From positions 62,001 through 126,000 of the IMG/VR virus record IMGVR_UViG_3300029984_000001: a stretch of 64,000 nt of DNA. One strand, written 5' to 3'. The position numbers were made by a program, and so were the translations under genes. The notes under the pieces are model-generated. The model searched no databases. It was not told the DNA's origin and saw only the letters and a program-made list of their open reading frames with translations. Positions 4,806 to 54,013 of this stretch are shown here, piece by piece (position 1 is the stretch's first letter; every line of letters starts with the position of its first letter).

Positions 4806-4825
4806 ATAATAGGAGGAAATTATAT

Positions 4826-5020
4826 ATGGATGCTATGTCAGTAAGAAAAGGGACAATTTTATTTAAACCTAAAACTGATTTTAAAATCAGATATGTTATT
4901 ATAGATTATGATACTAATTATATTTATTGTATAGATCTAAATGGAAAAAATAAAAATATAAGACCTGTAATCAAATTCTCATATACAGAATGTGATGAAA
5001 AAGGTTTAATCAAAGAATAA
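4826..5020 (+). CDS. hypothetical protein
   Basis: 64 aa ORF with AGGAGG RBS. Confidence 0.65.
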   Translation: MDAMSVRKGTILFKPKTDFKIRYVIIDYDTNYIYCIDLNGKNKNIRPVIKFSYTECDEKGLIKE

Positions 5021-6764: not shown

Positions 6765-7247
6765 ATGATAAATATGGGTAAATTTTGGGATATTCTAAAA
6801 AAGAGACAAAATAATAGTATACATAATATTTATAATAGTATATATAATAAAATGAACATAAATCACGAGGAACTTCTAAAGGTAGAGTTCTGTATTAATA
6901 TGGCTAAGGGTAATGATTATTATAGAGACTCTGTTGTAATAAAGTCAGAGTATACAAATGATAATCATATGGAAGTAATTAAGTTTAAAGATAAATATAC
7001 AGTCATAAAAATGTATAATAACTATGATACTGGAAAATGGCAGTCTTGTTACATATTAGATAGAGAGATAAACAGAATGGTATTTACAAGTGAAGATCCT
7101 GATGTTGGGTCAATCAATTTATTCGACGAATATAACAATCAAAAGGTAGTTATAGTATCTTTATTAGTGGAAAAACTTTTACATAGTGTATTATCGGTAT
7201 ATGATATTACACACTCTAAACAACTTTACATAAAATCTATAATATAA
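6765..7247 (+). CDS. hypothetical protein
   Basis: ORF track; RBS AAGGAG. Confidence 0.7.
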   Translation: MINMGKFWDILKKRQNNSIHNIYNSIYNKMNINHEELLKVEFCINMAKGNDYYRDSVVIKSEYTNDNHMEVIKFKDKYTVIKMYNNYDTGKWQSCYILDREINRMVFTSEDPDVGSINLFDEYNNQKVVIVSLLVEKLLHSVLSVYDITHSKQLYIKSII

Positions 7248-7261
7248 AGGAGATATATGAT

Positions 7262-7825
7262 ATGATAGATATAGAAAATTTGATTATGAAAACATTTACA
7301 TATACAGTAGAAGATATTAAAAATGGATATGTATTAGAAGATGAAATAGAAAAATATATAAAAGAAAAATATTATAATGAAAGAAAAAGATATATACAAA
7401 AATATATGAATAGTATAGATTCTTTATCATTTTTTGATTCTGTTATTCAATGTACAATAATGTTTCAATGTATAGAATTAGATTGGTATGAAAATGAAAA
7501 AATAGAAACAGACATAGATTCTGATTATAAATTTGTGATTAGACATTTCAATACAGACTTATGTTACTTTTATGGTAATAGGAAAATCGAGTATAATCAT
7601 CTATCTATCAATATAAATGGTCAATTATTCGATTCAGCATTATTAACAACAGGTAAATATGATAAAGCATGGTGTGAATTAATTAAATTGTCTGGAGAAT
7701 TTTTATATCCTAATAAAGTAGTATCAGAACAAATAGTAGAAGAAAAATTAGTTTACTTATTATCAAGGTCTGTTTCAGATCAAAAATTTATTAGATTAAA
7801 TAGTATAGAAGAATTTAAAGAATAA
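7262..7825 (+). CDS. hypothetical protein
   Basis: ORF track; RBS AAAGGAG; followed by hairpin terminator. Confidence 0.7.
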   Translation: MIDIENLIMKTFTYTVEDIKNGYVLEDEIEKYIKEKYYNERKRYIQKYMNSIDSLSFFDSVIQCTIMFQCIELDWYENEKIETDIDSDYKFVIRHFNTDLCYFYGNRKIEYNHLSININGQLFDSALLTTGKYDKAWCELIKLSGEFLYPNKVVSEQIVEEKLVYLLSRSVSDQKFIRLNSIEEFKE

Positions 7826-7864
7826 AACTAAAAGGGATATTAATCCCTTTTATTTTTTATGAAA

Positions 7865-7876
7865 AACATTAGAATA
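7865..7876 (+). promoter_or_regulatory. AR9-type late promoter AACA-N6-TA
   Basis: AACAttagaaTA directly upstream of 7888. Confidence 0.65.
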
Positions 7877-7887
7877 ATAGAAAGGAA

Positions 7888-9213
7888 GTGTTATATTTGA
7901 TAGATAAAAATAGATTTAAAGTAGTCACTATAAAGGATATAAAAGAAGAATCAAAAAAAGAAAAACTAAAAGAATTACATAGTTATAATTTAAATGCTTC
8001 TTTATCAATACCTTCTGTTGTTAATGGATATAGTCTTGGAGTCGGATTAATAAAGAAATGGTTCTTCAATAGAATAAAAGAATCTTATTTTAAATATTGG
8101 ACAGTGGATGAATCTAATTATAATTCAGCTTTTGATAGAGCAGAACAATATAAAAATTTTAAAATACAAAAACCGTCTTTACTAATAACTCCTAGAGTTG
8201 ATACACAATGGAATAGAGAAGGATTAGATAATAACTTATTCGGAGTGAATACATATCTAAGAAGAAAAGTTGTAGAAAATTCTTTTTTTAAAGATCCTAT
8301 AAATAATATTTATTTAGATATGGATACAGAACAATTAAGAATAAATTTTACCTTTAGAGTGAGAGTATCATCTAGATCACATCAACTAAACTTATTAAAA
8401 ACAATGAATATGAAATGTAGAATAGGAGCTACAGAAACAGATTATCAAGATATGGATTTTCATATACCATTTGATTTGATGTGTCAAATAGCAAAAGATG
8501 TAGGTTATAAAGTTATAGATAATAAGATAGAAAATATGCAAGGTTTTATATCTTATTTAAATCAACATTCACAGATGCCTATATTATATAGATATAGAAA
8601 GATAAATGCTAAATATGAATTCTTTTTAAGAATGAAGCAGGTATATACCCATATAGATTGTAGAGATCAATTGGATGCTGATGATGGAGAACAATTAGAA
8701 CAAACCAAAACCAATTATATAATAACAATGAATTGTGTTTTAGATATGGAGATTCCTAAATTTTATGCTTATTGTTCTAAGAATAGTCATATTTTTAATA
8801 TCGATTCAGTTCATGAATATACAATACCTGTTAACACAATTCAATTCCCAGATATAAAAGATGTAAATGAAAAAGGTTGGAATAAATATTATGAAATTGA
8901 TATAGAAGAAGATGATTTAAATAAACCTTTAGCTTTCAACTTTGAAGAATTATTCTTAGAAGAAACAGGAGATATATCTATTATCAAGAATATCATAGAT
9001 CATAATAATGAGTGCTATATATCACCTTCTGTATTTATTGAGATGAAATTGTATAATAATGGTCAAGAAGTAGATTATACAATAAATTGGAAAAACTTCA
9101 CTATAGAGTCCAATAATTTACTTTTAAGCCATATTACACATATAGTCATGTATTTAGATAGGAAATATATAAATGACTATAAAATCAATATGGACATGCT
9201 GTCAGATAGCTAA
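7888..9213 (+). CDS. putative virion structural protein
   Basis: 441 aa, preceded by late-type promoter; no enzymatic motif. Confidence 0.55.
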   Translation: MLYLIDKNRFKVVTIKDIKEESKKEKLKELHSYNLNASLSIPSVVNGYSLGVGLIKKWFFNRIKESYFKYWTVDESNYNSAFDRAEQYKNFKIQKPSLLITPRVDTQWNREGLDNNLFGVNTYLRRKVVENSFFKDPINNIYLDMDTEQLRINFTFRVRVSSRSHQLNLLKTMNMKCRIGATETDYQDMDFHIPFDLMCQIAKDVGYKVIDNKIENMQGFISYLNQHSQMPILYRYRKINAKYEFFLRMKQVYTHIDCRDQLDADDGEQLEQTKTNYIITMNCVLDMEIPKFYAYCSKNSHIFNIDSVHEYTIPVNTIQFPDIKDVNEKGWNKYYEIDIEEDDLNKPLAFNFEELFLEETGDISIIKNIIDHNNECYISPSVFIEMKLYNNGQEVDYTINWKNFTIESNNLLLSHITHIVMYLDRKYINDYKINMDMLSDS

Positions 9214-45134: not shown

Positions 45135-46310
45135 ATGAAAATTGAAAGTGTAGTCAAAGATAAATTATATACTTTAGTAAGTAAACAATATGAATTGAAT
45201 AAAGATAAATTAAAAAAATGTTTTGGTAGATTCGTTGAAAAAAGACAAGAAGATCTGTATGATATAGCCCCTGCTTCAAGAATATATTTTGGACAAGAAG
45301 ATATAGACGATTTCTTTAATTCCTTAGGTATGGCAGAAAAAGATGTCGTGGAGATTGTAAAAAATACATATTATTATCCTATAGCCAACTTCAATCCTAG
45401 AGCAGCTAAAGATTCGTTCACTTGTACTATATTATGCTTAGTAAGATATAGTTTATTACATAAACTAGAAAAAGAATTAGAAATGTATACTGCTTATATG
45501 TCATTCTCTGGTAAATTCTACCCATCAATACATTATTCATCTTTTCCTAAAGTACAACCTTCTGAATATAGACATGTAATAGAATATGTTGTTAATCATG
45601 AATTAAGTGGAAGGTTTGATATAAAGAAAGAGGGTAATGTATTTAAAGCTGTGCGTTCTATAGGAAGTACTTGGTATAATACTTATGGTAGTAAATTCAA
45701 ATCATTTGATGATGAAGATGTAGTTTATGTGATTCAACAATTACATAATAGAATCAAATCATTTATACAAAATATTGCTGAAGTATACTATGATGTATAT
45801 GCAAAGAAAGATACATATTTAACATATGATAGTGATAATTTATCAGATACCAGTTATCATCTGGCTGATAATGATTCATTAAGAATGGAAAGAATATTAG
45901 AAAAGTCTATGACTTATATGAATAATAATAGAGTTAATTATACATGGTGTATATCATCATCAGATCAATATGTAAGTGCTGACGAATTAAGAGAAATAAT
46001 GACATCTATAATAAATGAATCTAGTAATATACCAGATATGAGAGAATTTATAAGATGTATGTTGACAGTATTCTTTTCTCAATCAGACACTAAAGATATT
46101 AATGATCCACATTTTTTAGCTTTATCTATTGTTCCTAAACCAAATACAAAGGATCAATATGAAATAAGAAAGAAAGAAATTGTAGAGAAATGGTTAGATG
46201 AAAATTCACCACAATATAGAAAGAGAAGAAATAGACCTGCTACAGCATCTTCTTATCAAAAAGCTGTAGTGAAATATGTAGCTCTATGTGTATATAATGT
46301 AAACAAGTAA
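45135..46310 (+). CDS. hypothetical late protein, probably virion
   Basis: 391 aa; own late promoter and terminator (46308-46331). Confidence 0.6.
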   Translation: MKIESVVKDKLYTLVSKQYELNKDKLKKCFGRFVEKRQEDLYDIAPASRIYFGQEDIDDFFNSLGMAEKDVVEIVKNTYYYPIANFNPRAAKDSFTCTILCLVRYSLLHKLEKELEMYTAYMSFSGKFYPSIHYSSFPKVQPSEYRHVIEYVVNHELSGRFDIKKEGNVFKAVRSIGSTWYNTYGSKFKSFDDEDVVYVIQQLHNRIKSFIQNIAEVYYDVYAKKDTYLTYDSDNLSDTSYHLADNDSLRMERILEKSMTYMNNNRVNYTWCISSSDQYVSADELREIMTSIINESSNIPDMREFIRCMLTVFFSQSDTKDINDPHFLALSIVPKPNTKDQYEIRKKEIVEKWLDENSPQYRKRRNRPATASSYQKAVVKYVALCVYNVNK

Positions 46311-46414
46311 GGGAACTAATTAGTTCCCTTATATTTTAGATTGTAAAAGTAAATTAATATAGTTATATATTATAGATATGAATAAAATATATTATTTAAA
46401 GGAGATGTATTAAA

Positions 46415-46702
46415 ATGAAAAACAAATTTAATCTTATTTTAAACTTAGAAGGTGCTACTGAAAAAGATGTATCTAGTATTATTGGATGTTTGTTAAATGA
46501 GGATGTAAAAGAAATAGAATCTTTAGGTATGAAAATTACATTTGTTAGTTTAGAAAAATACCTTTTAGGTTTTACTGATTTTTCATACAGAAAATTATTA
46601 TGTACAGATTTAGAAACAGGTAAATTAATAATAGATATTACAATGAATCATGATATGGTCACCGATTTCAAAACTGCTATAAGAACTGAATTAAAATTAT
46701 AA
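46415..46702 (+). CDS. hypothetical protein
   Basis: RBS AAAGGAG; TATATTATA at 46366. Confidence 0.7.
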   Translation: MKNKFNLILNLEGATEKDVSSIIGCLLNEDVKEIESLGMKITFVSLEKYLLGFTDFSYRKLLCTDLETGKLIIDITMNHDMVTDFKTAIRTELKL

Positions 46703-46806
46703 CATAATTAATAGAATAGAGATTGAGAAATCAATATCTATAATATACATAAGAAATGATTGATATAAGAGAGGTAAAATGTTTATTATGAAGGAGAATG
46801 ATAAAA

Positions 46807-46935
46807 ATGGGAATCTTGTTAAAAATGAAAGGTGGAAAATATACTAATGAAGATTTAAGAAATAATATAAATAAGGATACTAAGATAATAGATTTAATAA
46901 TAAACAATAGGAGTGATATAGATGGAAAAAATTAA
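46807..46935 (+). CDS. small hypothetical protein (42 aa)
   Basis: AAGGAG RBS; overlaps start of next gene; not in ORF track. Confidence 0.35.
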   Translation: MGILLKMKGGKYTNEDLRNNINKDTKIIDLIINNRSDIDGKN

Positions 46936-47476
46936 AATACCTACTTATTCAAATTTAGTAGGAATAAAAAGTACACAAAAAGAAATGAAGGATGCTGTTT
47001 CAAAATATATACATACAAAAGATAAAGAGAAAATAAAAACAATATTATTAGAAATGAAAGATAGATTTCCTAATGCTAAAAAGATGATAGATGCTATAGA
47101 CAAAATAATAAATGATGAATATATTCTTAATAAATGTGTAGTAAATGAGACTTGTAACACTGGTCTATATACAAATATCAGTGTAACATTATGTCCATTA
47201 AGAGATGAAGAACAATCTGGTTTTAAGTTTTCATTATCATCTCCATTATATTATTCAATATATGAAGAATGGAAACTAGAAAATAAAAATAAGAATGTAT
47301 ATGATTTTATTAAAGAGAATGATATAGAAACTATTTTTATCACAGTAAATACAAATACTAACTTTAGACTTAAAATTTATAATGGGAATAAAAATGATTT
47401 GCTGTATGTTAATTATAAACCAAAATACGATCCACAATATAAAGATATACAATTTATGGAAAGCTTATTCAAATAA
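46922..47476 (+). CDS. hypothetical protein
   Basis: ORF track, RBS AGGAG. Confidence 0.7.
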   Translation: MEKIKIPTYSNLVGIKSTQKEMKDAVSKYIHTKDKEKIKTILLEMKDRFPNAKKMIDAIDKIINDEYILNKCVVNETCNTGLYTNISVTLCPLRDEEQSGFKFSLSSPLYYSIYEEWKLENKNKNVYDFIKENDIETIFITVNTNTNFRLKIYNGNKNDLLYVNYKPKYDPQYKDIQFMESLFK

Positions 47477-47543
47477 AAATGGGAGCTTAGTCTCCTCTTT
47501 ATTTTTTCTCTTTAAAAACATATTATTAAAGAGGAGGGATTAT

Positions 47544-48281
47544 ATGGCTGATAAAATTGATAATAAATTAAGAAAAGAAATAGAAGCTATTATATATAAA
47601 TTCTTTGATAAGATGGATAAGTCTGAAACTAATAGTGAGTATTATAAAAATCTATTTGCAAAAATGAGTAATGATGATTTTTATAAATTTGCTTCTCTAG
47701 ATTTCCCGTATAGATTTCATCATAAACCTTGGGTAGTTGAACCTACTATGGGTGATATAAAAGAAGCTTTAAATTTTATAGGAGTTCCTTTAATGGAGAA
47801 AGTTTCACTACCTTATATATATAAAGATGAAAACGGGGTAGCAGTAAACTCTAAAGAAGCTTTAGTCATTTATCCTCCTATGAAGAAGATGCAACAATTC
47901 ATTACACATAAAAACTCTGTTGCTATAGATATAGATAATAGAGATATGAAAAATGGTCAATTGTCTGGTGCAGATAAAGGGGGAAAAACTACAGATAGAG
48001 AGTTAGAATCTTTGGGAATACTTGGATTAGATCATTGTCTTGAAGAGTTTTCTGGTCCTAAAGCAGATAGTATGGAAAGTAAATCTTTAATGTATAATAC
48101 TATTTCTACAACTGGTCAAGTATCTAGCAAAGATATACAAACAGATAATACAGATTCATTATCTAGAAATCTCATGAGTGTATATCTAATGGGTGCTAAT
48201 ATAAATAGTAATATAGTCAACCAAGATTATATGTTGCCTTATACAATGAAAGAGAAATCTAGGTCAATAGAAAGGATTTAA
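47544..48281 (+). CDS. virion RNA polymerase beta C-terminal fragment (phiKZ gp149-like)
   Basis: KKMQQ..K...RDMKNGQLSGADKGGKTTDRELESL..LG....EEF...KADS parallels the RpoB C-terminus (QQP..G...GGQRFGEMEVWAL..YGA...L.E....KSDD); late promoter at 47517-47528. Confidence 0.7.
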   Translation: MADKIDNKLRKEIEAIIYKFFDKMDKSETNSEYYKNLFAKMSNDDFYKFASLDFPYRFHHKPWVVEPTMGDIKEALNFIGVPLMEKVSLPYIYKDENGVAVNSKEALVIYPPMKKMQQFITHKNSVAIDIDNRDMKNGQLSGADKGGKTTDRELESLGILGLDHCLEEFSGPKADSMESKSLMYNTISTTGQVSSKDIQTDNTDSLSRNLMSVYLMGANINSNIVNQDYMLPYTMKEKSRSIERI

Positions 48282-48375
48282 AAAATATTACAATTATATA
48301 TTATAACTGTGTAATGATAATTAATTTATATAATGTGTTTAACTTTTATATAAGAAGTCTATGGAGGTGAATTAG

Positions 48376-48501
48376 ATGAGTAATAATGGAAAAGAAACTG
48401 GCATTATTCAAGAACAAGGATTTATTGTTCCTGGAGGGTTTGACAAAATCTCTGATGAAGAAAAAGAAAGATTAGAAAAAGAAAGCAGAGATAAAAAATA
48501 A
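48376..48501 (+). CDS. small hypothetical protein (41 aa)
   Basis: GGAGGTG RBS, TATATTATA at 48297, terminator hairpin after stop. Confidence 0.55.
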   Translation: MSNNGKETGIIQEQGFIVPGGFDKISDEEKERLEKESRDKK

Positions 48502-48630
48502 TGTGTTAAAAAGATACTAGGAAAACTAGTATCTTATTTTATTATAAAGGAGGTATCAAACAGAACGTTATATCTTATTCTTAAGATATAACAATCATAC
48601 AGAGTGTATAAAGGAAAGGATTTGATTTAA

Positions 48631-49398
48631 ATGAATAAGAAACTTTTTATAGTTTACAATATAATTTTAATATCATTAATAATATTTACAGGAGTAGTTT
48701 TACATAAAAATGAAGAATTAAAAACTACTAATACACAATTAGTAGTAAAATCATGGGAAACAGATAAACAGCTAAGTCAAGTTAAAAATGAAATGAATGC
48801 TTATAAAACATTATACACTTCTCAAGAAGGTGATATAAAAGATTATATAGTTTTATATAAGAAAACTAAAACAGAATTAGATAACCTAAAATCACAAATT
48901 TACATATCTAAAGAAAAAGAGAAAAATGCTTCTAGAGGTGATTACATAAATAAAAATCTTAGTGATTATGCAATAATGACTGTAGATGAGATGAACGAAT
49001 GGATAGCAAAGAGAGCACCTAAAGGTAGTCCTTTTATTGGAAAAGGAGAAGTATTTTTAAAGACAGGAGCTGCTAATAAGATAGACCCTAAGCTAATAGT
49101 AGCATTAGCTGGAAATGAATCTGGATGGGGGATGTCTAAATTAGCTAGAGATAAAGGTAATTATTTTAGTATTACCGCATATAATGATAATCCTTATACC
49201 TCAGCAAAAGCATTCAATGGGGATTTTCAAACAAACATATCAGATGGTGTTGCATGGATAAAGAGTAATTTTTATGATAAAGGGAAAACTTCTTTAGCCC
49301 AAATGCAATCTGAAAATAATAAAGCTTATGCCCAAAATAATGATGGTAGTCCTAATAAAGAATGGACTTCTGTTATTTGTAATATAGTTTACCATTAA
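48631..49398 (+). CDS. membrane-anchored N-acetylglucosaminidase (GH73-like peptidoglycan hydrolase)
   Basis: N-terminal TM, coiled coil, ASRG linker, ALAGNESGWG.S.LA..K.N.F.I.AY. Confidence 0.8.
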   Translation: MNKKLFIVYNIILISLIIFTGVVLHKNEELKTTNTQLVVKSWETDKQLSQVKNEMNAYKTLYTSQEGDIKDYIVLYKKTKTELDNLKSQIYISKEKEKNASRGDYINKNLSDYAIMTVDEMNEWIAKRAPKGSPFIGKGEVFLKTGAANKIDPKLIVALAGNESGWGMSKLARDKGNYFSITAYNDNPYTSAKAFNGDFQTNISDGVAWIKSNFYDKGKTSLAQMQSENNKAYAQNNDGSPNKEWTSVICNIVYH

Positions 49399-49442
49399 AA
49401 ATTTATAATATATATTATTTAAAAATGAAGGAGAGATAAATT

Positions 49443-50633
49443 ATGGAAAATTTAAGAAGATTAAACGTTCAATTAATAGGTATAGGTGGAGCAGGAAATA
49501 AAGGTACAATTAATGTTGTAGAAAAAGGTGTACTAGAAAAAGATGATATATTCTTAATCAATTCAACAATGAGAGATGTAGCTCCAGATTATAAAGATAT
49601 AGCATATATCTATGATACTGTAGGTGGTTCTGGTAAAGATATGAAATTTGCTGAATCTTTAGCAAAAAAAGAATTAGAAAGAGGAACTTTGGGTCAACAA
49701 TTAAATGAATGGGTAAAACCAGATACAGATATTGTAGTCATTACAGGAAGTACAGAAGGTGGTACTAATGCTGGTTCTATTTCAGTAATTACTGATTTCA
49801 TATATGATGAATTAGATATTCCAGTGGTTAATATATTATTAACAGGATTTATGAAAGATGCAAGAGGAGTTAAAAATACAATAGATGTATTCAAGAAACT
49901 TAGAATAAAAGAAATAGGTGTCCAAACTATATCCAGTTCAAAGTGTCTAGAAGGTAAAGATATAGTTAAAGCACAACAACACGCTAATGATGAATTAGCT
50001 CAAAGAATATCTATATTAATAACTAAAGGTATTGTTGATAGTGATGATAATATAGATAATACTGACTTATATAATACAGCAGCATTCCCTGGATATATGA
50101 CTATAGAACATATTCCATTACCAAAATTAAAAGATATGAATGCTTTTAATGAAACTTTAAATACAATGATAAATGGTTCTAAGTCGTTAGATATAGATCC
50201 AGAAGAAGATAAAAAGAAAGTTGGTAAAAGAGCAGTATTTATAAACTTAAAAGATGAAAAAGAAAAAATGTTTGTAGATTTTGAATTTGAATCTTTAAAA
50301 GAATATTATGGTGAACCTTATGATAAATTTGATCATATTCAATTTGAAAAAGATCAAGAAAGTTATATATCAGTAATACTTACAGGTATGAATATGCCAT
50401 TGGCTGAATTAATAGATATGGAAAATAAATATAAAATGTTAAATTCTTCTGTAAATAAAGAGGTAGATACATTCGATGAAGTTGTTGCTGATATGAAAAG
50501 TGATGTAGATGATGGTATGTTTGACATAGGTAGAAAAAGAAGAAGACCTAAAGAGAATGTTTCGGGTCCAGAACATATGAAAAAATATGGAGTTAAACAA
50601 GAAGAAAAAGCTAAAGATGATATTTATAAATAA
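49443..50633 (+). CDS. tubulin/FtsZ-family GTPase (TubZ/PhuZ-like)
   Basis: GIGGAGNK, GGSGKD, signature variant EGGTNAG, T7 loop NIDNTD. Confidence 0.85.
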   Translation: MENLRRLNVQLIGIGGAGNKGTINVVEKGVLEKDDIFLINSTMRDVAPDYKDIAYIYDTVGGSGKDMKFAESLAKKELERGTLGQQLNEWVKPDTDIVVITGSTEGGTNAGSISVITDFIYDELDIPVVNILLTGFMKDARGVKNTIDVFKKLRIKEIGVQTISSSKCLEGKDIVKAQQHANDELAQRISILITKGIVDSDDNIDNTDLYNTAAFPGYMTIEHIPLPKLKDMNAFNETLNTMINGSKSLDIDPEEDKKKVGKRAVFINLKDEKEKMFVDFEFESLKEYYGEPYDKFDHIQFEKDQESYISVILTGMNMPLAELIDMENKYKMLNSSVNKEVDTFDEVVADMKSDVDDGMFDIGRKRRRPKENVSGPEHMKKYGVKQEEKAKDDIYK

Positions 50634-50651
50634 AAGGAGATTGATAAATAT

Positions 50652-51536
50652 ATGTTTGAAAACTTGATAGAACATGTTAAGAAACAACCAATCCCAGAAA
50701 AACATTATATAGATATGACTGAATCTAGATTAATGAATCCTAATTTATTGTCTGACAAAATAAAAGATATATCACTATTAGAAGATAATGAATTGCTTCA
50801 ATTACTAATAATTGATTATCCTACTATACTAGAAGAGATAGTTGAGAAGAAGAACGTTGTATATATTAATCTATTCAAGAAACCTAGATTCTTAACCATA
50901 TTTACTAATGCTGTGAGTTATAATATATCAAGAGGAAAACCTTTAGAACCACAAAATAGGATATATATAAATATAATCATATATGATTATATTTGCCATA
51001 CAGAAAAAGATATGATGTTAAAATCATTAATGGCTAATTTATCTAAGATAGTAAATAGAGATATGATTCCTATGATTATGGCTATAGGAATCCCAGAAGA
51101 GTTAGCATGTACAATTTCTATAGCAAGATATTCATCTAGACAAGAATATATTAATATAAAAAGAGTTAATCTAATTATACTTGGTTCTCCATTAGAATTA
51201 ATGACAGAACAAATGATAGTGGATTTAATAAGTGTTATATATGATAAGATGCCAATATTATTTGAAACAATAATGTTTGATCACACTATAGATAATGATA
51301 ACACTGAAGATGAGGGTGAAATCTACAGTAGAATTTCAAATGCAATATTAACTCATTTAGAGAATATGACTTTGGAAAATATCACTACAGTGTTAAAGAT
51401 GTATTCAAATGATTATGTGTTATTACATTCAAATGAAGATGTAAGATTTAGTTTAAGAAGCATAAACAATACTGATTTTCCAAGGATTAACCAAACGGTT
51501 GATTCAATGATTATGAAGGGTGAATACATTCCATAA
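50652..51536 (+). CDS. hypothetical helical protein co-transcribed with tubulin
   Basis: ORF track, RBS AAAGGAG, terminator after. Confidence 0.75.
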   Translation: MFENLIEHVKKQPIPEKHYIDMTESRLMNPNLLSDKIKDISLLEDNELLQLLIIDYPTILEEIVEKKNVVYINLFKKPRFLTIFTNAVSYNISRGKPLEPQNRIYINIIIYDYICHTEKDMMLKSLMANLSKIVNRDMIPMIMAIGIPEELACTISIARYSSRQEYINIKRVNLIILGSPLELMTEQMIVDLISVIYDKMPILFETIMFDHTIDNDNTEDEGEIYSRISNAILTHLENMTLENITTVLKMYSNDYVLLHSNEDVRFSLRSINNTDFPRINQTVDSMIMKGEYIP

Positions 51537-51657
51537 TATAAAAGAAGCAAAAGGGTATAAAAACCCTTTTGTTTTTTGTGTAAATATTTAAAATTATAAT
51601 TGTATATTATAATAGTGAATAAATATATAATAATTTTAAAGAAGGAAGTGTATTAAT

Positions 51658-52488
51658 ATGGAAAAAGATAATGTAAAATCGTCTAAAGAAATTGAAAGTA
51701 ATATAAAAGAAATAGGGTTAGAAAAAATTAATATAATAATAGATGATGTACGAATACAAAATAATAACCCAAATGTAGAAGGTGATAGAGATTTATCTAT
51801 TTTATCATTAGAATCTAGTATAGATAAAGAATATATTAAAGAATTTAATAGAGTAAAACCTTTAACAAACAATGAACTGAACGAAATAAAAAAGTATGCA
51901 GATGAACAATTAGAAGAGATTGGTTTAGAAAAAGGATTATTAGATAAATTTATAGATGGATATAAAATAAGATTTAATACCACTAAAGTAGGTTTTAATG
52001 AAATAGATGCACCTATTCACAGAACAACATTATTACATTATGCAGGTATAAATAATATTCAATCGCAAATGAATGGTGGGTATAATAACAATATTAATTA
52101 TACTAATGTATATTATACAAATCCATATGTAGATTATAATGAAAGTACCCTTAATACATTATTATTACTACTCAGCGATAATATGTTTGATACATCACCA
52201 TCTGAAAGAAAGTTTAAAAAAATAAGAATATATTTTTGTAGAGATAACAATAAAAATGTAAATCTTGTTATATCCTTTAGATCATTTTATAAATCTTTAT
52301 GGGATCAAGCTCCAGAAGGATTTGTAAGACAAATATCTATCCCTTTAGTTATGAATGGTGAAATAGAAAATAAAATATCAATGTTTAAACAAGATATATC
52401 AGCAGGATATTCAATAGATAATGATTGGTTAAATATATTAGTAGAAAAAATAAAAGAATGGTTTGGAATAGAAATAAATTTAGTATAA
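51658..52488 (+). CDS. hypothetical protein
   Basis: TATATTATA at 51603; RBS. Confidence 0.7.
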   Translation: MEKDNVKSSKEIESNIKEIGLEKINIIIDDVRIQNNNPNVEGDRDLSILSLESSIDKEYIKEFNRVKPLTNNELNEIKKYADEQLEEIGLEKGLLDKFIDGYKIRFNTTKVGFNEIDAPIHRTTLLHYAGINNIQSQMNGGYNNNINYTNVYYTNPYVDYNESTLNTLLLLLSDNMFDTSPSERKFKKIRIYFCRDNNKNVNLVISFRSFYKSLWDQAPEGFVRQISIPLVMNGEIENKISMFKQDISAGYSIDNDWLNILVEKIKEWFGIEINLV

Positions 52489-52503
52489 AGGAAGTGTATT
52501 AAC

Positions 52504-53040
52504 ATGAAAAATGAAATACAAAAATGTATAGTGCGGTTAACTAATAAATTATCAGAAAGTAATTTATCTGAATGCTCATCTGATTTTAAAGTAAATAAAA
52601 ATAAAAAGGCTTTTGATGAATTTTATAAAGTCTTATCACAACATATAGATTTTAACAATTTAACTAAAAAAGAAGTCGAAGAATTAGGATTTAAATTATA
52701 TGATAAAGAGTATAGTTTATGGCGTATACCTTTATATCTATACCCAATTTTACCAGAAGGTTTAGAAATAAAATCTATTGATAATATTAAAAGAATAGTA
52801 GGTAAAGATAATATAGATCCAGATCATAGGTCTGGATATATTGCTTATAATATAAATATAAACAATGATATAAATAAAGTAAACATATTAGATAAATACA
52901 ATAATTTATTAAAAGATGGTTGGGGACACATAAGATTAGAAATTATAGAAGATGAAGAATTTGGTAAAGCTATGGTTGAAGATGGAGATGGTAGACCAGT
53001 TTCATTTTCTTATAATAAAGATACTGGAAATTGGGAATAA
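52504..53040 (+). CDS. hypothetical protein
   Basis: ORF track. Confidence 0.7.
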   Translation: MKNEIQKCIVRLTNKLSESNLSECSSDFKVNKNKKAFDEFYKVLSQHIDFNNLTKKEVEELGFKLYDKEYSLWRIPLYLYPILPEGLEIKSIDNIKRIVGKDNIDPDHRSGYIAYNININNDINKVNILDKYNNLLKDGWGHIRLEIIEDEEFGKAMVEDGDGRPVSFSYNKDTGNWE

Positions 53041-53058
53041 TTAAAAGGGGGTGTATAT

Positions 53059-53322
53059 ATGAAAAATAAAAATTTTCCATTGAAAGGAAAAATAATAAAT
53101 ACAAATAATTCTGAATTTAATATTGAAGATATACCAATATTAAATAGTAGTATTACTATATTTTCTGATTTACCAGAAATAGATTCAAATATTAAAAAGA
53201 TGAATGAAAATATATTTATATCAAAACCAATAAAAATATCAGAGTCTCATATAGATTTTCTAACTAGAATGACATTGGAGAGTTTATTTAAAAACTTAAA
53301 AGAAAGTGATAGAGAAATATAA
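53059..53322 (+). CDS. hypothetical protein
   Basis: ORF track. Confidence 0.55.
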   Translation: MKNKNFPLKGKIINTNNSEFNIEDIPILNSSITIFSDLPEIDSNIKKMNENIFISKPIKISESHIDFLTRMTLESLFKNLKESDREI

Positions 53323-53354
53323 TTTAGATAAAATATTAGGAGGATTTGATTGAT

Positions 53355-53513
53355 ATGAAAAAAGAAATACAAGACCATATTAAATATCTAAAAAGTCTAA
53401 CTATCGAAGAGAAGAATCAAAAGTTTGATAAATTTTTAAATGGATTAAAAGATTTAAATTTAGATTTAAATAATGAATTGAAAATATTAAAAACGATAAG
53501 AGGTGAATATTAA
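53355..53513 (+). CDS. small hypothetical protein (52 aa)
   Basis: AGGAGG RBS; MKKEIQDHIK... Confidence 0.5.
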   Translation: MKKEIQDHIKYLKSLTIEEKNQKFDKFLNGLKDLNLDLNNELKILKTIRGEY

Positions 53514-53514
53514 G

Positions 53515-53667
53515 ATGAATAATGTTAAAATAACCAATGAAAACATTATACAAGGAAATTCAACATCAAATACTATAGTAATAGGATTCAATGAAATTTC
53601 AAATAATATTCCAATAGAAATAAATTCTATTGGAATGAGATTGTTTTTATTGAATAGAAAAATATAA
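53515..53667 (+). CDS. small hypothetical protein (50 aa)
   Basis: GAGGTG RBS; MNNVKITNE... Confidence 0.4.
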   Translation: MNNVKITNENIIQGNSTSNTIVIGFNEISNNIPIEINSIGMRLFLLNRKI

Positions 53668-53733
53668 TTTCTTAAAAATATTAGGGTGCCCACTCACCCT
53701 TTTATTTTTTTGTAAAATAAGGAGTGATAATAT

Positions 53734-53946
53734 ATGGATGCTTTTGAAAAACATATAGCTAAATGTATTCAGAATAGGGATAATTATAAACCATATAAAC
53801 CTGTATATAAAAAAGATATTATTCAAATTGATCCTAAAGATATACCATTACCAAAATTTAGAAAATTTGAACAGAGATATTTAGTTGATGAAAATGGAAA
53901 TGAAATAAAACTACCAGACTTATTTGAAAGAGAACAAGAAAAATAA
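53734..53946 (+). CDS. hypothetical protein
   Basis: ORF track, RBS AAGGAG. Confidence 0.65.
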   Translation: MDAFEKHIAKCIQNRDNYKPYKPVYKKDIIQIDPKDIPLPKFRKFEQRYLVDENGNEIKLPDLFEREQEK

Positions 53947-54013
53947 GTATACATTTTATTTTTTATTACATACTAGGAAACTATAAACTAATATAAATTA
54001 GGAGGTTTAAACT

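What the first reader, a model, noticed from the sequence alone, without database searches (positions are those of the whole stretch)
48631..51536. Tubulin/FtsZ-like GTPase clustered with a membrane-anchored peptidoglycan hydrolase
Gene order is TM-coiled-coil-glucosaminidase, tubulin (GGGTG[S/T]G altered to EGGTNAG, intact NxDxxD, basic RKRRR tail), then a helical unknown. The hydrolase is not built like an endolysin and has no late promoter. I saw no tubC iterons or obvious TubR. It may be a cytoskeleton/cell-wall remodelling module that positions phage DNA or alters division in a Gram-positive host.
Basis: partly seen in the sequence, partly recalled or inferred. Interest (0 to 1): 0.6.

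Follow-up and report, generated by a model that had tools for sequence, protein, structure and literature searches.

The report
Phage tubulin operon with wall hydrolase
A giant phage from peat carries an early-expressed operon with a divergent tubulin/FtsZ-like GTPase from a large undescribed phage clade, which is almost always paired with an unknown helical-repeat protein and often, but not always, preceded by a membrane-anchored cell-wall-cutting enzyme.

Summary
Window 48631-51536 encodes a TM + coiled-coil + GH73 glucosaminidase (255 aa), a tubulin/FtsZ-fold GTPase (396 aa: EGGTNAG, NIDNTD, RKRRR tail) and an all-helical 294-aa protein. The host genome is a 263.6-kb, 26% GC jumbo phage distantly related to Bacillus phage AR9, and no chimallin was detected.

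The tubulin is not an orphan. It belongs to a clade of at least 149 metagenomic 50%-identity clusters. In the tree this clade is separate from cellular FtsZ, and PhuZ and TubZ each form their own groups; its position relative to PhuZ is unresolved.

Among 37 dereplicated lineages:
- The 294-aa protein follows the tubulin in nearly all of them, and a conserved 41-aa micro-ORF precedes it in most.
- A membrane-anchored peptidoglycan glycosidase sits upstream in 25 of 36 scorable lineages. In three separate lineages the GH73 domain is replaced by an SLT domain in the same architecture.
- The glycosidase is missing at this position in 11 lineages. Two of four near-complete genomes without it had no small GH73 or SLT enzyme anywhere.

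The block follows an AR9-type early promoter. I found no late-type promoter and no iterons.

My reading is an early cytoskeletal module (tubulin plus the 294-aa partner), co-expressed with a wall enzyme that acts outside the membrane. A physical tubulin-hydrolase machine is unlikely on topology. All functions are inferred.

The parts
48289..48311 (+). Early-type promoter (TACAATTA-TATATTAT-6N-G; predicted start G at 48311)
   Evidence: It matches the genome-wide motif TATAATTRTATATTAT-6N-G, which has 30 sites. The motif corresponds to the published AR9 early consensus AAATATATATTAT-6N-G (PMC5312081). An equivalent site lies upstream of the micro-ORF in 8 of 9 relatives inspected.
48376..48501 (+). 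Conserved 41-aa micro-ORF with its own Shine-Dalgarno sequence
   Evidence: An HMM of it finds a copy upstream of the tubulin in 49 of 54 loci.
48511..48535 (+). Hairpin followed by a T-rich tail; terminator or attenuator between the micro-ORF and the hydrolase
   Evidence: dG -13 kcal/mol, z -4.0. Comparable hairpins occur in L003, L002, L004 and L010.
48567..48592 (+). 11-bp perfect hairpin in the hydrolase leader, with no T-run
   Evidence: dG -11.7 kcal/mol, z -8.1. It is conserved in L003 with one compensatory A-T to C-G pair.
48631..49398 (+). Membrane-anchored GH73 glucosaminidase: N-terminal TM (aa ~5-25), coiled-coil stalk (~26-110), catalytic domain (~116-238)
49443..50633 (+). Tubulin/FtsZ-fold GTPase with a globular core (aa 9-335), a disordered linker and a motif-bearing C-terminal tail
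50652..51536 (+). 294-aa all-alpha helical-repeat protein, the constant downstream neighbour of the tubulin
51548..51577 (+). Intrinsic terminator closing the block (stem 51548-51571 plus TTTTTT)
   Evidence: dG -19.7 kcal/mol, z -7.1.
51595..51617 (+). Next early-type promoter; marks the downstream boundary of the unit

Best explanation
The block 48289-51577 is an early transcription unit of an AR9-like, chimallin-less jumbo phage of a low-GC Gram-positive host.

Its core is a cytoskeletal pair:
- A tubulin/FtsZ-fold GTPase with a complete GTP pocket and an intact T7 activating loop, which should therefore polymerise head-to-tail and hydrolyse GTP within the filament.
- A 294-aa alpha-solenoid protein that accompanies it almost everywhere and probably acts as its adaptor or regulator.

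The conserved short motifs in the long tubulin tail (FD followed by a basic run, an xFFxxF helix, and an acidic-aromatic C-terminus) are the likely handles for subunit-subunit or adaptor contacts, as in PhuZ and TubZ. I infer that the filaments organise the infected cytoplasm from early in infection by positioning replicating phage DNA or assembly sites.

The glucosaminidase is made from the same unit but works on the other side of the membrane. A stable N-terminal anchor and a ~75-residue coiled-coil stalk would hold the GH73 domain in the inner layers of the wall, where it cuts glycan strands. This either loosens the wall or acts as a pre-positioned lysin.

Shown: fold, motifs, gene order, its conservation, and the promoter class by homology with AR9. 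Inferred: polymerisation, the tubulin-partner contact, the timing of expression, and every cellular role.
For: - Fold and motifs.
- Size of the clade and conservation of T1 (GxGAAGNK), T4 (EGGTGSG) and T7 (NIDxTD).
- In the tree FtsZ is split from all phage and plasmid tubulins with 100% SH-aLRT.
- The 294-aa homologue lies downstream in 33 of 34 dereplicated lineages that have downstream sequence. Its family is as small and as metagenomic as the tubulin's.
- The early-type promoter is upstream and the late PWM is silent across the block.
- Elsewhere in the window, early-type sites precede an RNA polymerase beta piece and a topoisomerase II gene, and late-type sites precede tail-fibre-like genes.
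- The hydrolase catalytic Glu aligns with the same position in the closest solved GH73 relative.
- GH73 is replaced by SLT in the same architecture three separate times.
- The only GH73, CHAP, SLT or M23 domains found in the genome are in this ORF and in a 2,910-aa protein. Amidase_2, Amidase_3 and GH25 gave nothing.
Against: - There are no expression data: no RNA run holds the locus.
- A terminator-like hairpin lies between the promoter and the hydrolase, so read-through is assumed.
- The complex prediction for tubulin plus the 294-aa protein gave no verdict.
- The 294-aa fold matches nothing informative.
- The T4 loop of this protein and its three closest relatives reads GGTNAG instead of GGTGSG, which might weaken nucleotide handling.
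- No cargo is identified: no chimallin, no centromere repeats, no TubR.
- In L002 and L004 terminator-like hairpins separate the tubulin from its neighbours, so co-transcription is not universal.
Confidence: 0.5

Rival explanations
1. Integrated cytoskeleton and cell-wall machine. Tubulin filaments, through a membrane-spanning link, direct where the anchored glycosidase cuts. This would reshape or enlarge the cell or block septation, like a phage-made divisome or elongasome.
For: The genes share an orientation and an apparent transcription unit. A membrane-anchored glycosidase lies upstream in 25 of 36 lineages. Its catalytic domain was replaced three separate times while the TM + coiled-coil architecture and the position were kept. 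The closest solved relative of the GH73 domain is 4q2w/7pj3; from memory, that is pneumococcal LytB, a daughter-cell separation enzyme.
Against: Only about four residues of the hydrolase are predicted to be cytoplasmic. No bridging membrane protein is conserved in the block. The enzyme is absent upstream in 11 lineages, and two near-complete genomes have no small GH73 or SLT protein at all. Catalytic-domain swapping is also typical of ordinary lysins.
Confidence: 0.15
2. The adjacency is incidental. The hydrolase is simply the phage's signal-anchored endolysin, parked in a collinear replication and transcription gene block, with no functional tie to the tubulin.
For: It is the only stand-alone peptidoglycan hydrolase found among the eight families searched. 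It matches PHROG 'endolysin' families, including phrog_25820 over nearly its whole length. Catalytic domains are swapped between relatives. The whole region from gyrase to RNA polymerase beta is collinear among relatives. AR9 has a putative holin at the equivalent position.
Against: There is no late-type promoter, while an early-type one lies upstream. The anchor is strongly hydrophobic (I/L/F/V-rich), not the weakly hydrophobic kind that I recall for releasable SAR domains. No holin was identified beside it. The AR9 genes at the equivalent position are not homologous. Other lysin families (NlpC/P60, VanY/M15, T4-type lysozyme and others) were not searched.
Confidence: 0.25
3. TubZ-like partition role. 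The tubulin segregates the phage genome during a carrier or pseudolysogenic state, for example into daughter cells or forespores of a spore-forming host.
For: By profile comparison the family is closest to phage c-st TubZ (hhalign 98.5%, E 1.9e-15 over 270 columns). The tail motif xFFxxF resembles the c-st TubZ C-terminus DFFSKYM. A review links jumbo-phage tubulins to pseudolysogeny (PMC7824862).
Against: There are no iterons and no TubR-like gene. The genome has the AR9-type lytic architecture, with its own RNA polymerases and early and late promoters.
Confidence: 0.1
4. Host-division interference. The phage tubulin co-polymerises with host FtsZ, or titrates its membrane tethers, to stop division during infection.
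For: The profile is nearly as close to FtsZ as to TubZ (hhalign 97.8%, E 1.2e-12; PDB profile hits 3e-13). The FD-plus-basic-run tail is loosely reminiscent of Bacillota FtsZ C-terminal peptides such as IPGFFRRG.
Against: The resemblance of the tails is loose and is my own reading. A dedicated conserved partner and an intact catalytic T7 loop fit an autonomous polymer better than an inhibitor. Negativicutes carry a chromosomal copy next to their own FtsZ without obvious harm.
Confidence: 0.1

Closest known systems
PhuZ (tubulin of nucleus-forming Chimalliviridae, e.g. phiKZ gp39)
   Same: It is a tubulin-fold GTPase of a jumbo phage with multisubunit RNA polymerases. It has a long C-terminal tail ending in acidic and hydrophobic residues. 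Maximum-likelihood trees place PhuZ next to this clade (SH-aLRT 84 with the mixture model, 99 with LG+G4).
   Different: It has no PF22334 or phrog_4733 match. The profile comparison with phiKZ PhuZ is weak (55%, E 1e-4, GTPase domain only). No chimallin is present. All 194 tblastn-detected PhuZ records are from phages of Gram-negative hosts. The sister relationship is not robust (AU p 0.33, long-branch warning).
TubZ of Clostridium phage c-st (TubZRC/TubY partition system)
   Same: It is the best profile match among mobile-element tubulins and a top structural match (4xcq, 3v3t). It comes from a low-GC Bacillota setting. It has a flexible tail with an FF-containing terminal motif.
   Different: There is no TubR and there are no tubC iterons. 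In the tree TubZ groups with a different metagenomic family. The partners here are a 294-aa solenoid protein and a 41-aa micro-ORF. The genome is a lytic-type jumbo phage, not a plasmid prophage.
FtsZ / CetZ
   Same: They share the two-domain fold and the T1, T4 and T7 motifs. FtsZ is the best sequence hit in the PDB and CetZ1 is the top Foldseek hit.
   Different: Identity is 13-19%. The clade is split from FtsZ with 100% support. The signature reads EGGTGSG (here EGGTNAG) rather than GGGTGTG. The tail and the genomic context differ.
GH73 glucosaminidases: 4q2w/7pj3 and tail lysins of Herelleviridae
   Same: The catalytic domain is homologous (E 5e-17). It is 36-42% identical to the lysin modules of Bacillus, Staphylococcus and Listeria phage tail proteins.
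   Different: Here the domain stands alone behind an N-terminal membrane anchor and a coiled-coil stalk, in an early-type operon. From memory only, not tested: S. aureus SagB is a cellular membrane-anchored GH73 that trims nascent glycan strands. It is the closest functional analogy, but it did not appear among the PDB hits at E <= 0.01.
Signal-anchored / SAR endolysins
   Same: They combine an N-terminal membrane segment with a muralytic domain, and catalytic modules are interchangeable between relatives.
   Different: There is no late promoter and no adjacent holin was recognised. The anchor is strongly hydrophobic, and a long coiled-coil stalk is present.

Membership tests
Tubulin/FtsZ superfamily | Two-domain fold: a Rossmann-like GTPase domain plus a C-terminal activation domain | tested here: met
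   The model has pLDDT 84.6. Foldseek matches to CetZ, TubZ, FtsZ and PhuZ span 330-400 columns at E down to 4e-18.
Tubulin/FtsZ superfamily | Nucleotide-binding loops T1 and T4 (signature GGGTG[ST]G) and the T7 loop NxDxxD | tested here: met
   T1 is GIGGAGNK and T7 is NIDNTD, both intact. T4 reads EGGTNAG here and EGGTGSG in most of the clade. The effect of the G-to-N change is unknown.
Tubulin/FtsZ superfamily | GTP-dependent polymerisation | not testable with these tools
   This needs purified protein.
PhuZ | Match to the PhuZ family models (PF22334 phage tubulin C-terminal domain; phrog_4733) | tested here: not met
   The window protein has no hit, whereas phiKZ PhuZ hits both models strongly. 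The clade HMM does not find phiKZ PhuZ at E <= 1. hhalign gives 55%.
PhuZ | Co-occurrence with the nuclear shell protein chimallin | tested here: not met
   PF25677 and phrog_4795 find nothing in the complete 263.6-kb genome at E <= 10. The models are sequence-based, so a very divergent shell protein is not excluded.
PhuZ | Monophyly with PhuZ in a tree | tested here: inconclusive
   PhuZ is the sister group in both ML trees. The alternative placement is not rejected (AU p 0.33) and a long-branch warning was given.
TubZRC partition system | An adjacent TubR DNA-binding adaptor and a tubC iteron centromere | tested here: not met
   No repeat array lies in 46000-54000. The neighbouring genes have no DNA-binding family hit.
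FtsZ | Placement within the FtsZ clade; a conserved C-terminal peptide for FtsA/SepF | tested here: not met
   FtsZ sequences form a separate clade with 100% support. The tails differ.
GH73 N-acetylglucosaminidase | Pfam PF01832 above its gathering score, with the catalytic Glu in the (L/N)ES(N/G)WG motif | tested here: met
   42.2 bits against a cut-off of 30.2. NESGWG aligns to LESNWG of 4q2w. That this Glu is the catalytic residue is from my own knowledge of GH73.
Canonical phage endolysin | Late expression, usually beside a holin | tested here: not met
   No late-type promoter lies upstream of the gene, and the nearest promoter is of the early type. Holin adjacency was not examined beyond the Pfam and PHROG scans of the neighbours.
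AR9-like (Takahashivirus-related) jumbo phages | Split multisubunit RNA polymerase genes and the AR9 early and late promoter consensus sequences | tested here: met
   The RNA polymerase beta piece is 31% identical to those of AR9 and PBS1. Both promoter consensus sequences are recovered genome-wide. The relationship is distant, and AR9 itself lacks this block.

The most novel reading that the evidence does not exclude
These chimallin-less, AR9-like jumbo phages of Bacillota build their own early cytoskeleton from a tubulin clade that belongs to neither PhuZ nor TubZ, working with a dedicated alpha-solenoid adaptor. They couple it functionally to a stalked, membrane-anchored glycan-cutting enzyme. 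Together these would reorganise both the cytoplasm and the thick Gram-positive wall (cell enlargement, a block to septation, or a new kind of replication compartment). The same tubulin has been captured by Negativicutes chromosomes, where it sits in an operon with envelope proteins.
Probability: 0.12. Interest if true: 0.85.

Novelty: new variant of a known kind. Interest (0 to 1): 0.6.

Why it matters
Phage tubulins are known from two settings: PhuZ spindles that centre the chimallin nucleus in phages of Gram-negative bacteria, and TubZ partition systems of plasmid prophages.

This finding points to a third clade, apparently undescribed in the literature I could search. It is large: at least 149 clusters at 50% identity, and 45 IMG/VR loci, most on contigs of 113-284 kb. 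It sits in jumbo phages that have their own RNA polymerases but no detectable nuclear shell, and probably infect Gram-positive hosts.

It therefore raises a concrete question: what does a phage tubulin position when there is no chimallin nucleus? It also names two candidate partners to test, the 294-aa solenoid protein and the 41-aa micro-ORF.

The recurrent pairing with a membrane-anchored wall glycosidase, including three independent catalytic-domain replacements, is a testable hint that cytoplasmic organisation and wall cutting are co-regulated early in infection. If the hydrolase turns out to be just the lysin, the tubulin clade remains the main result.

Tried and rejected
- tblastn of the tubulin against 50,697 phage records found no match.
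- A single-protein pattern scan of IMG/VR found nothing. An 89-sequence alignment was needed.
- Complex prediction of the tubulin with the 294-aa protein scored 0.00 and gave 'no answer'. It is not evidence either way.
- Fold searches for the 294-aa model gave only generic HEAT/ARM/TPR-like rows below the noise level for helical repeats: Foldseek PDB best E 0.09; VIA wide best Z 6.4; ESM Atlas TM <= 0.5. Weak rows such as BtubC, CLASP2 or (KR)n-binding armadillo designs should not be read as matches.
- A profile of the 294-aa family against PDB sequences found nothing.
- Chimallin models found nothing.
- AR9 g080-g082, at the syntenic position, are not homologous to the block. The clade HMMs find nothing in the AR9 and phiKZ stretches I fetched.
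- The AU test under the mixture model did not finish in two attempts. It was redone with LG+G4 on 35 rows.
- No RNA sequencing run holds the locus.
- The TATATTAT between the hydrolase and the tubulin (49411) was considered as an internal early promoter. I rejected it because the upstream half and the 6N-G spacing do not fit.
- The AACAATCATACAG upstream of the hydrolase was considered as a late promoter. I rejected it because the PWM score is below 6.
Full report
**What is there.** The window is positions 62001-126000 of a 263,571-bp IMG/VR virus record that CheckV rates as complete. GC content is 26%. Between 48631 and 51536 three + strand ORFs follow one another with gaps of 44 and 18 bases.

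- The first ORF (255 aa) starts MNKK, followed by a ~20-residue I/L/F/V-rich segment. Next comes a proline-free, highly charged stretch with heptad periodicity. The C-terminus is a PF01832 glucosaminidase domain above Pfam's cut-off. Its closest solved relatives are 4q2w/7pj3, with the NESGWG motif aligned.
- The second ORF (396 aa) has no Pfam or PHROG hit by itself, but it is a tubulin/FtsZ-fold protein. phmmer finds FtsZ. A family profile finds FtsZ at 3e-13 and c-st TubZ at 3.7e-8. Nine of twelve relatives hit PF00091. The model (pLDDT 84.6) superposes on CetZ, TubZ, FtsZ and PhuZ over both domains.
- The third ORF (294 aa) is confidently modelled as an all-helical solenoid. It has no informative match by sequence or by fold.

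**The genome and its promoters.** The RNA polymerase beta piece downstream is about 31% identical to those of Bacillus phages AR9 and PBS1 and 28% to those of Staphylococcus jumbo phages. Two over-represented upstream motifs emerge from the genome itself.

- TATAATTRTATATTAT-6N-G has 30 sites.
- AACA-6N-TA, seen as AACATnnnAATAA, has about 35 intergenic sites, usually just after a terminator.

These match the experimentally defined AR9 early (virion RNA polymerase) and late (non-virion RNA polymerase) consensus sequences (PMC5312081). In the window, early-type sites precede an RNA polymerase subunit gene and a topoisomerase gene. Late-type sites precede tail-fibre-like genes, and also a helicase gene.

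The block of interest lies between two early-type sites (48289-48311 and 51595-51617). It begins with a conserved 41-aa micro-ORF (48376-48501), followed by a terminator-like hairpin (48511-48535). It ends with a strong terminator (51548-51577). Calling the block early rests on homology with AR9 and on assumed read-through of the first hairpin. No RNA data exist for the locus.

**The tubulin is a member of a large clade.** The word-based search found only 11 relatives. An exhaustive profile search found 149 cluster representatives at E <= 1e-30 and 425 at E <= 1e-10. About a hundred of them are full length. They share GxGAAGNK, EGGTGSG and NIDxTD. They also share recurring tail motifs: FD followed by a basic run, xFFxxF, and a C-terminal acidic-aromatic tip. 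The GGTNAG variant is confined to this protein and its three nearest relatives.

IMG/VR holds 45 loci, most on contigs of 113-284 kb. Relatives are binned with Bacillota MAGs (Solobacterium, Bacilli, Lachnospiraceae, Acidaminococcaceae, Phascolarctobacterium) and with one Spirochaetaceae MAG. The window phage itself recurs in 24 peat metagenome runs.

**Where the clade sits.**
- In a tree rooted on FtsZ, all phage and plasmid tubulins split from FtsZ with 100% support.
- TubZ groups with another metagenomic family.
- PhuZ appears as a long-branched sister of this clade. That placement is not robust (AU p 0.33, long-branch warning).
- Profile comparisons rank c-st TubZ (E 1.9e-15) and FtsZ (E 1.2e-12) far above phiKZ PhuZ (E 1e-4).
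- PhuZ detected by tblastn is confined to phages of Gram-negative hosts.
- The papers I could search describe only two jumbo-phage tubulin types.

I therefore file the protein in the superfamily, in its own clade, and not as PhuZ, TubZ or FtsZ.

**Is the linkage with the hydrolase conserved?** I built HMMs of the four genes and scanned 54 loci. I then dereplicated the tubulins at 90% identity into 37 lineages.

- The 294-aa protein follows the tubulin in 33 of 34 lineages that have downstream sequence.
- The micro-ORF precedes the tubulin in 49 of 54 loci.
- A TM + coiled-coil + GH73 protein lies within 2.6 kb upstream in 22 lineages.
- In three further lineages, placed separately on the tree, the same slot holds a TM + coiled-coil + SLT lytic transglycosylase.
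- Eleven lineages have neither enzyme at this position, and one cannot be scored.
- The tree needs at least six presence/absence changes.
- Among four near-complete genomes without the adjacent enzyme: one has a small SLT protein about 7 kb upstream, one has only a weak, below-cut-off GH73 hit in a 270-aa ORF far away, and two have no small GH73 or SLT protein at all.

The pairing is therefore frequent. The repeated replacement of the catalytic domain within the same architecture suggests selection for a membrane-anchored glycan cutter in this operon. It is nevertheless dispensable for the tubulin. The constant partners are the 294-aa protein and the micro-ORF.

**How it most likely works.**
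- An intact T7 loop together with a complete GTP pocket is the hallmark of polymerising members of the superfamily. Long tails with conserved short motifs are what PhuZ and TubZ use for inter-subunit and adaptor contacts (established knowledge). On this basis I infer an autonomous GTP-driven filament, working with the solenoid protein from early in infection to organise phage DNA or assembly sites.
- I found no cargo: no chimallin, no iterons and no TubR.
- The hydrolase is predicted to have only about four cytoplasmic residues. It should act in the inner wall, held there by a stable anchor and a stalk of roughly 75 residues. It is the only stand-alone wall hydrolase found among the eight families searched. 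The other GH73, CHAP and M23 domains sit in a 2,910-aa protein. It may therefore be the lysin, made early and kept tethered, or a wall-loosening enzyme.
- I put about 0.5 on the cytoskeletal-pair-plus-separate-wall-enzyme reading, 0.25 on pure coincidence with an ordinary lysin, 0.15 on a truly integrated machine, and 0.1 each on partition and on division interference. These readings overlap in part.

**Limits.**
- All functions are inferred.
- Trees used SH-aLRT from quick searches only.
- Host assignment rests on MAG binning, ribosome-binding sites and lysin homology.
- Only eight lysin families were searched in the genome.
- The complex prediction gave no verdict.

From phage c-st I fetched only the first 1,500 bases and the TubZ stretch.

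Noticed in passing
whole genome; in the window e.g. 991, 36624, 38080, 46358, 51595, 61193 (early) and 7865, 16716, 21832, 31414, 34057 (late): Two promoter classes are conserved with Bacillus phage AR9 despite only ~31% protein identity. The early class is TATAATTRTATATTAT-6N-G, often with TTGTAAA about 10 nt upstream. The late class is AACA-6N-TA, usually just after a hairpin terminator.
   Followed up: partly
window 48376-48501: A conserved 41-aa micro-ORF (I-x-E-x-G ... G-x-G, with a Lys/Glu-rich end) lies upstream of the tubulin in 49 of 54 loci. It is always the first gene after the early-type promoter. Its function is unknown.
   Followed up: partly
window 48545-48600: The hydrolase leader carries an orphan AAAGGAGG with no start codon after it. 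It also has an 11-bp perfect hairpin (48567-48592, z -8.1) that is conserved in the nearest relative with one compensatory base pair. This may be a regulatory RNA element.
   Followed up: partly
L064-L067 (Acidaminococcaceae and Phascolarctobacterium MAGs): Chromosomal homologues of this phage tubulin (GC 47-53%) lie on the same contigs as the genuine ftsZ. They are followed by a ~430-aa lipoprotein-like gene and a ~940-aa membrane protein gene, neither with a Pfam hit. They lack the micro-ORF, the hydrolase and the 294-aa gene. In the tree they nest inside the phage clade.
   Followed up: partly
genome 282-9014, minus strand (outside the window): A 2,910-aa protein carries Glucosaminidase, CHAP and M23 domains near its C-terminus and is preceded by a late-type promoter. 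It is probably a virion-associated wall-degrading or tape-measure-like protein.
   Followed up: no
P0153-P0165, P0173 (metagenomic proteins): A neighbouring tubulin family (T1 GxGNAGNQ, weak PF13809 hits) groups with TubZ in the tree. It also sits behind a ~52-aa micro-ORF and ahead of ~335-aa and ~300-aa ORFs.
   Followed up: partly
L048 4821-7996: The tubulin gene appears interrupted. An N-terminal fragment (4821-4997) and the rest (6998-7996) are separated by about 2 kb that holds a 310-aa ORF. By eye, its N-terminus looks like a TnpB-type transposon protein.
   Followed up: no
window 47382-48281: The listed ORF probably starts at Met55 (245 aa, as in the relatives). It matches phrog_3233 'RNA polymerase beta subunit', so it is likely another piece of a split phage RNA polymerase.
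   Followed up: no
window 48300-51600: The locus is held nearly whole by contigs of 24 peat metagenome runs, each from a differently coded study. The phage is therefore recurrent in peat. Several relatives come from gut or other samples.
   Followed up: no
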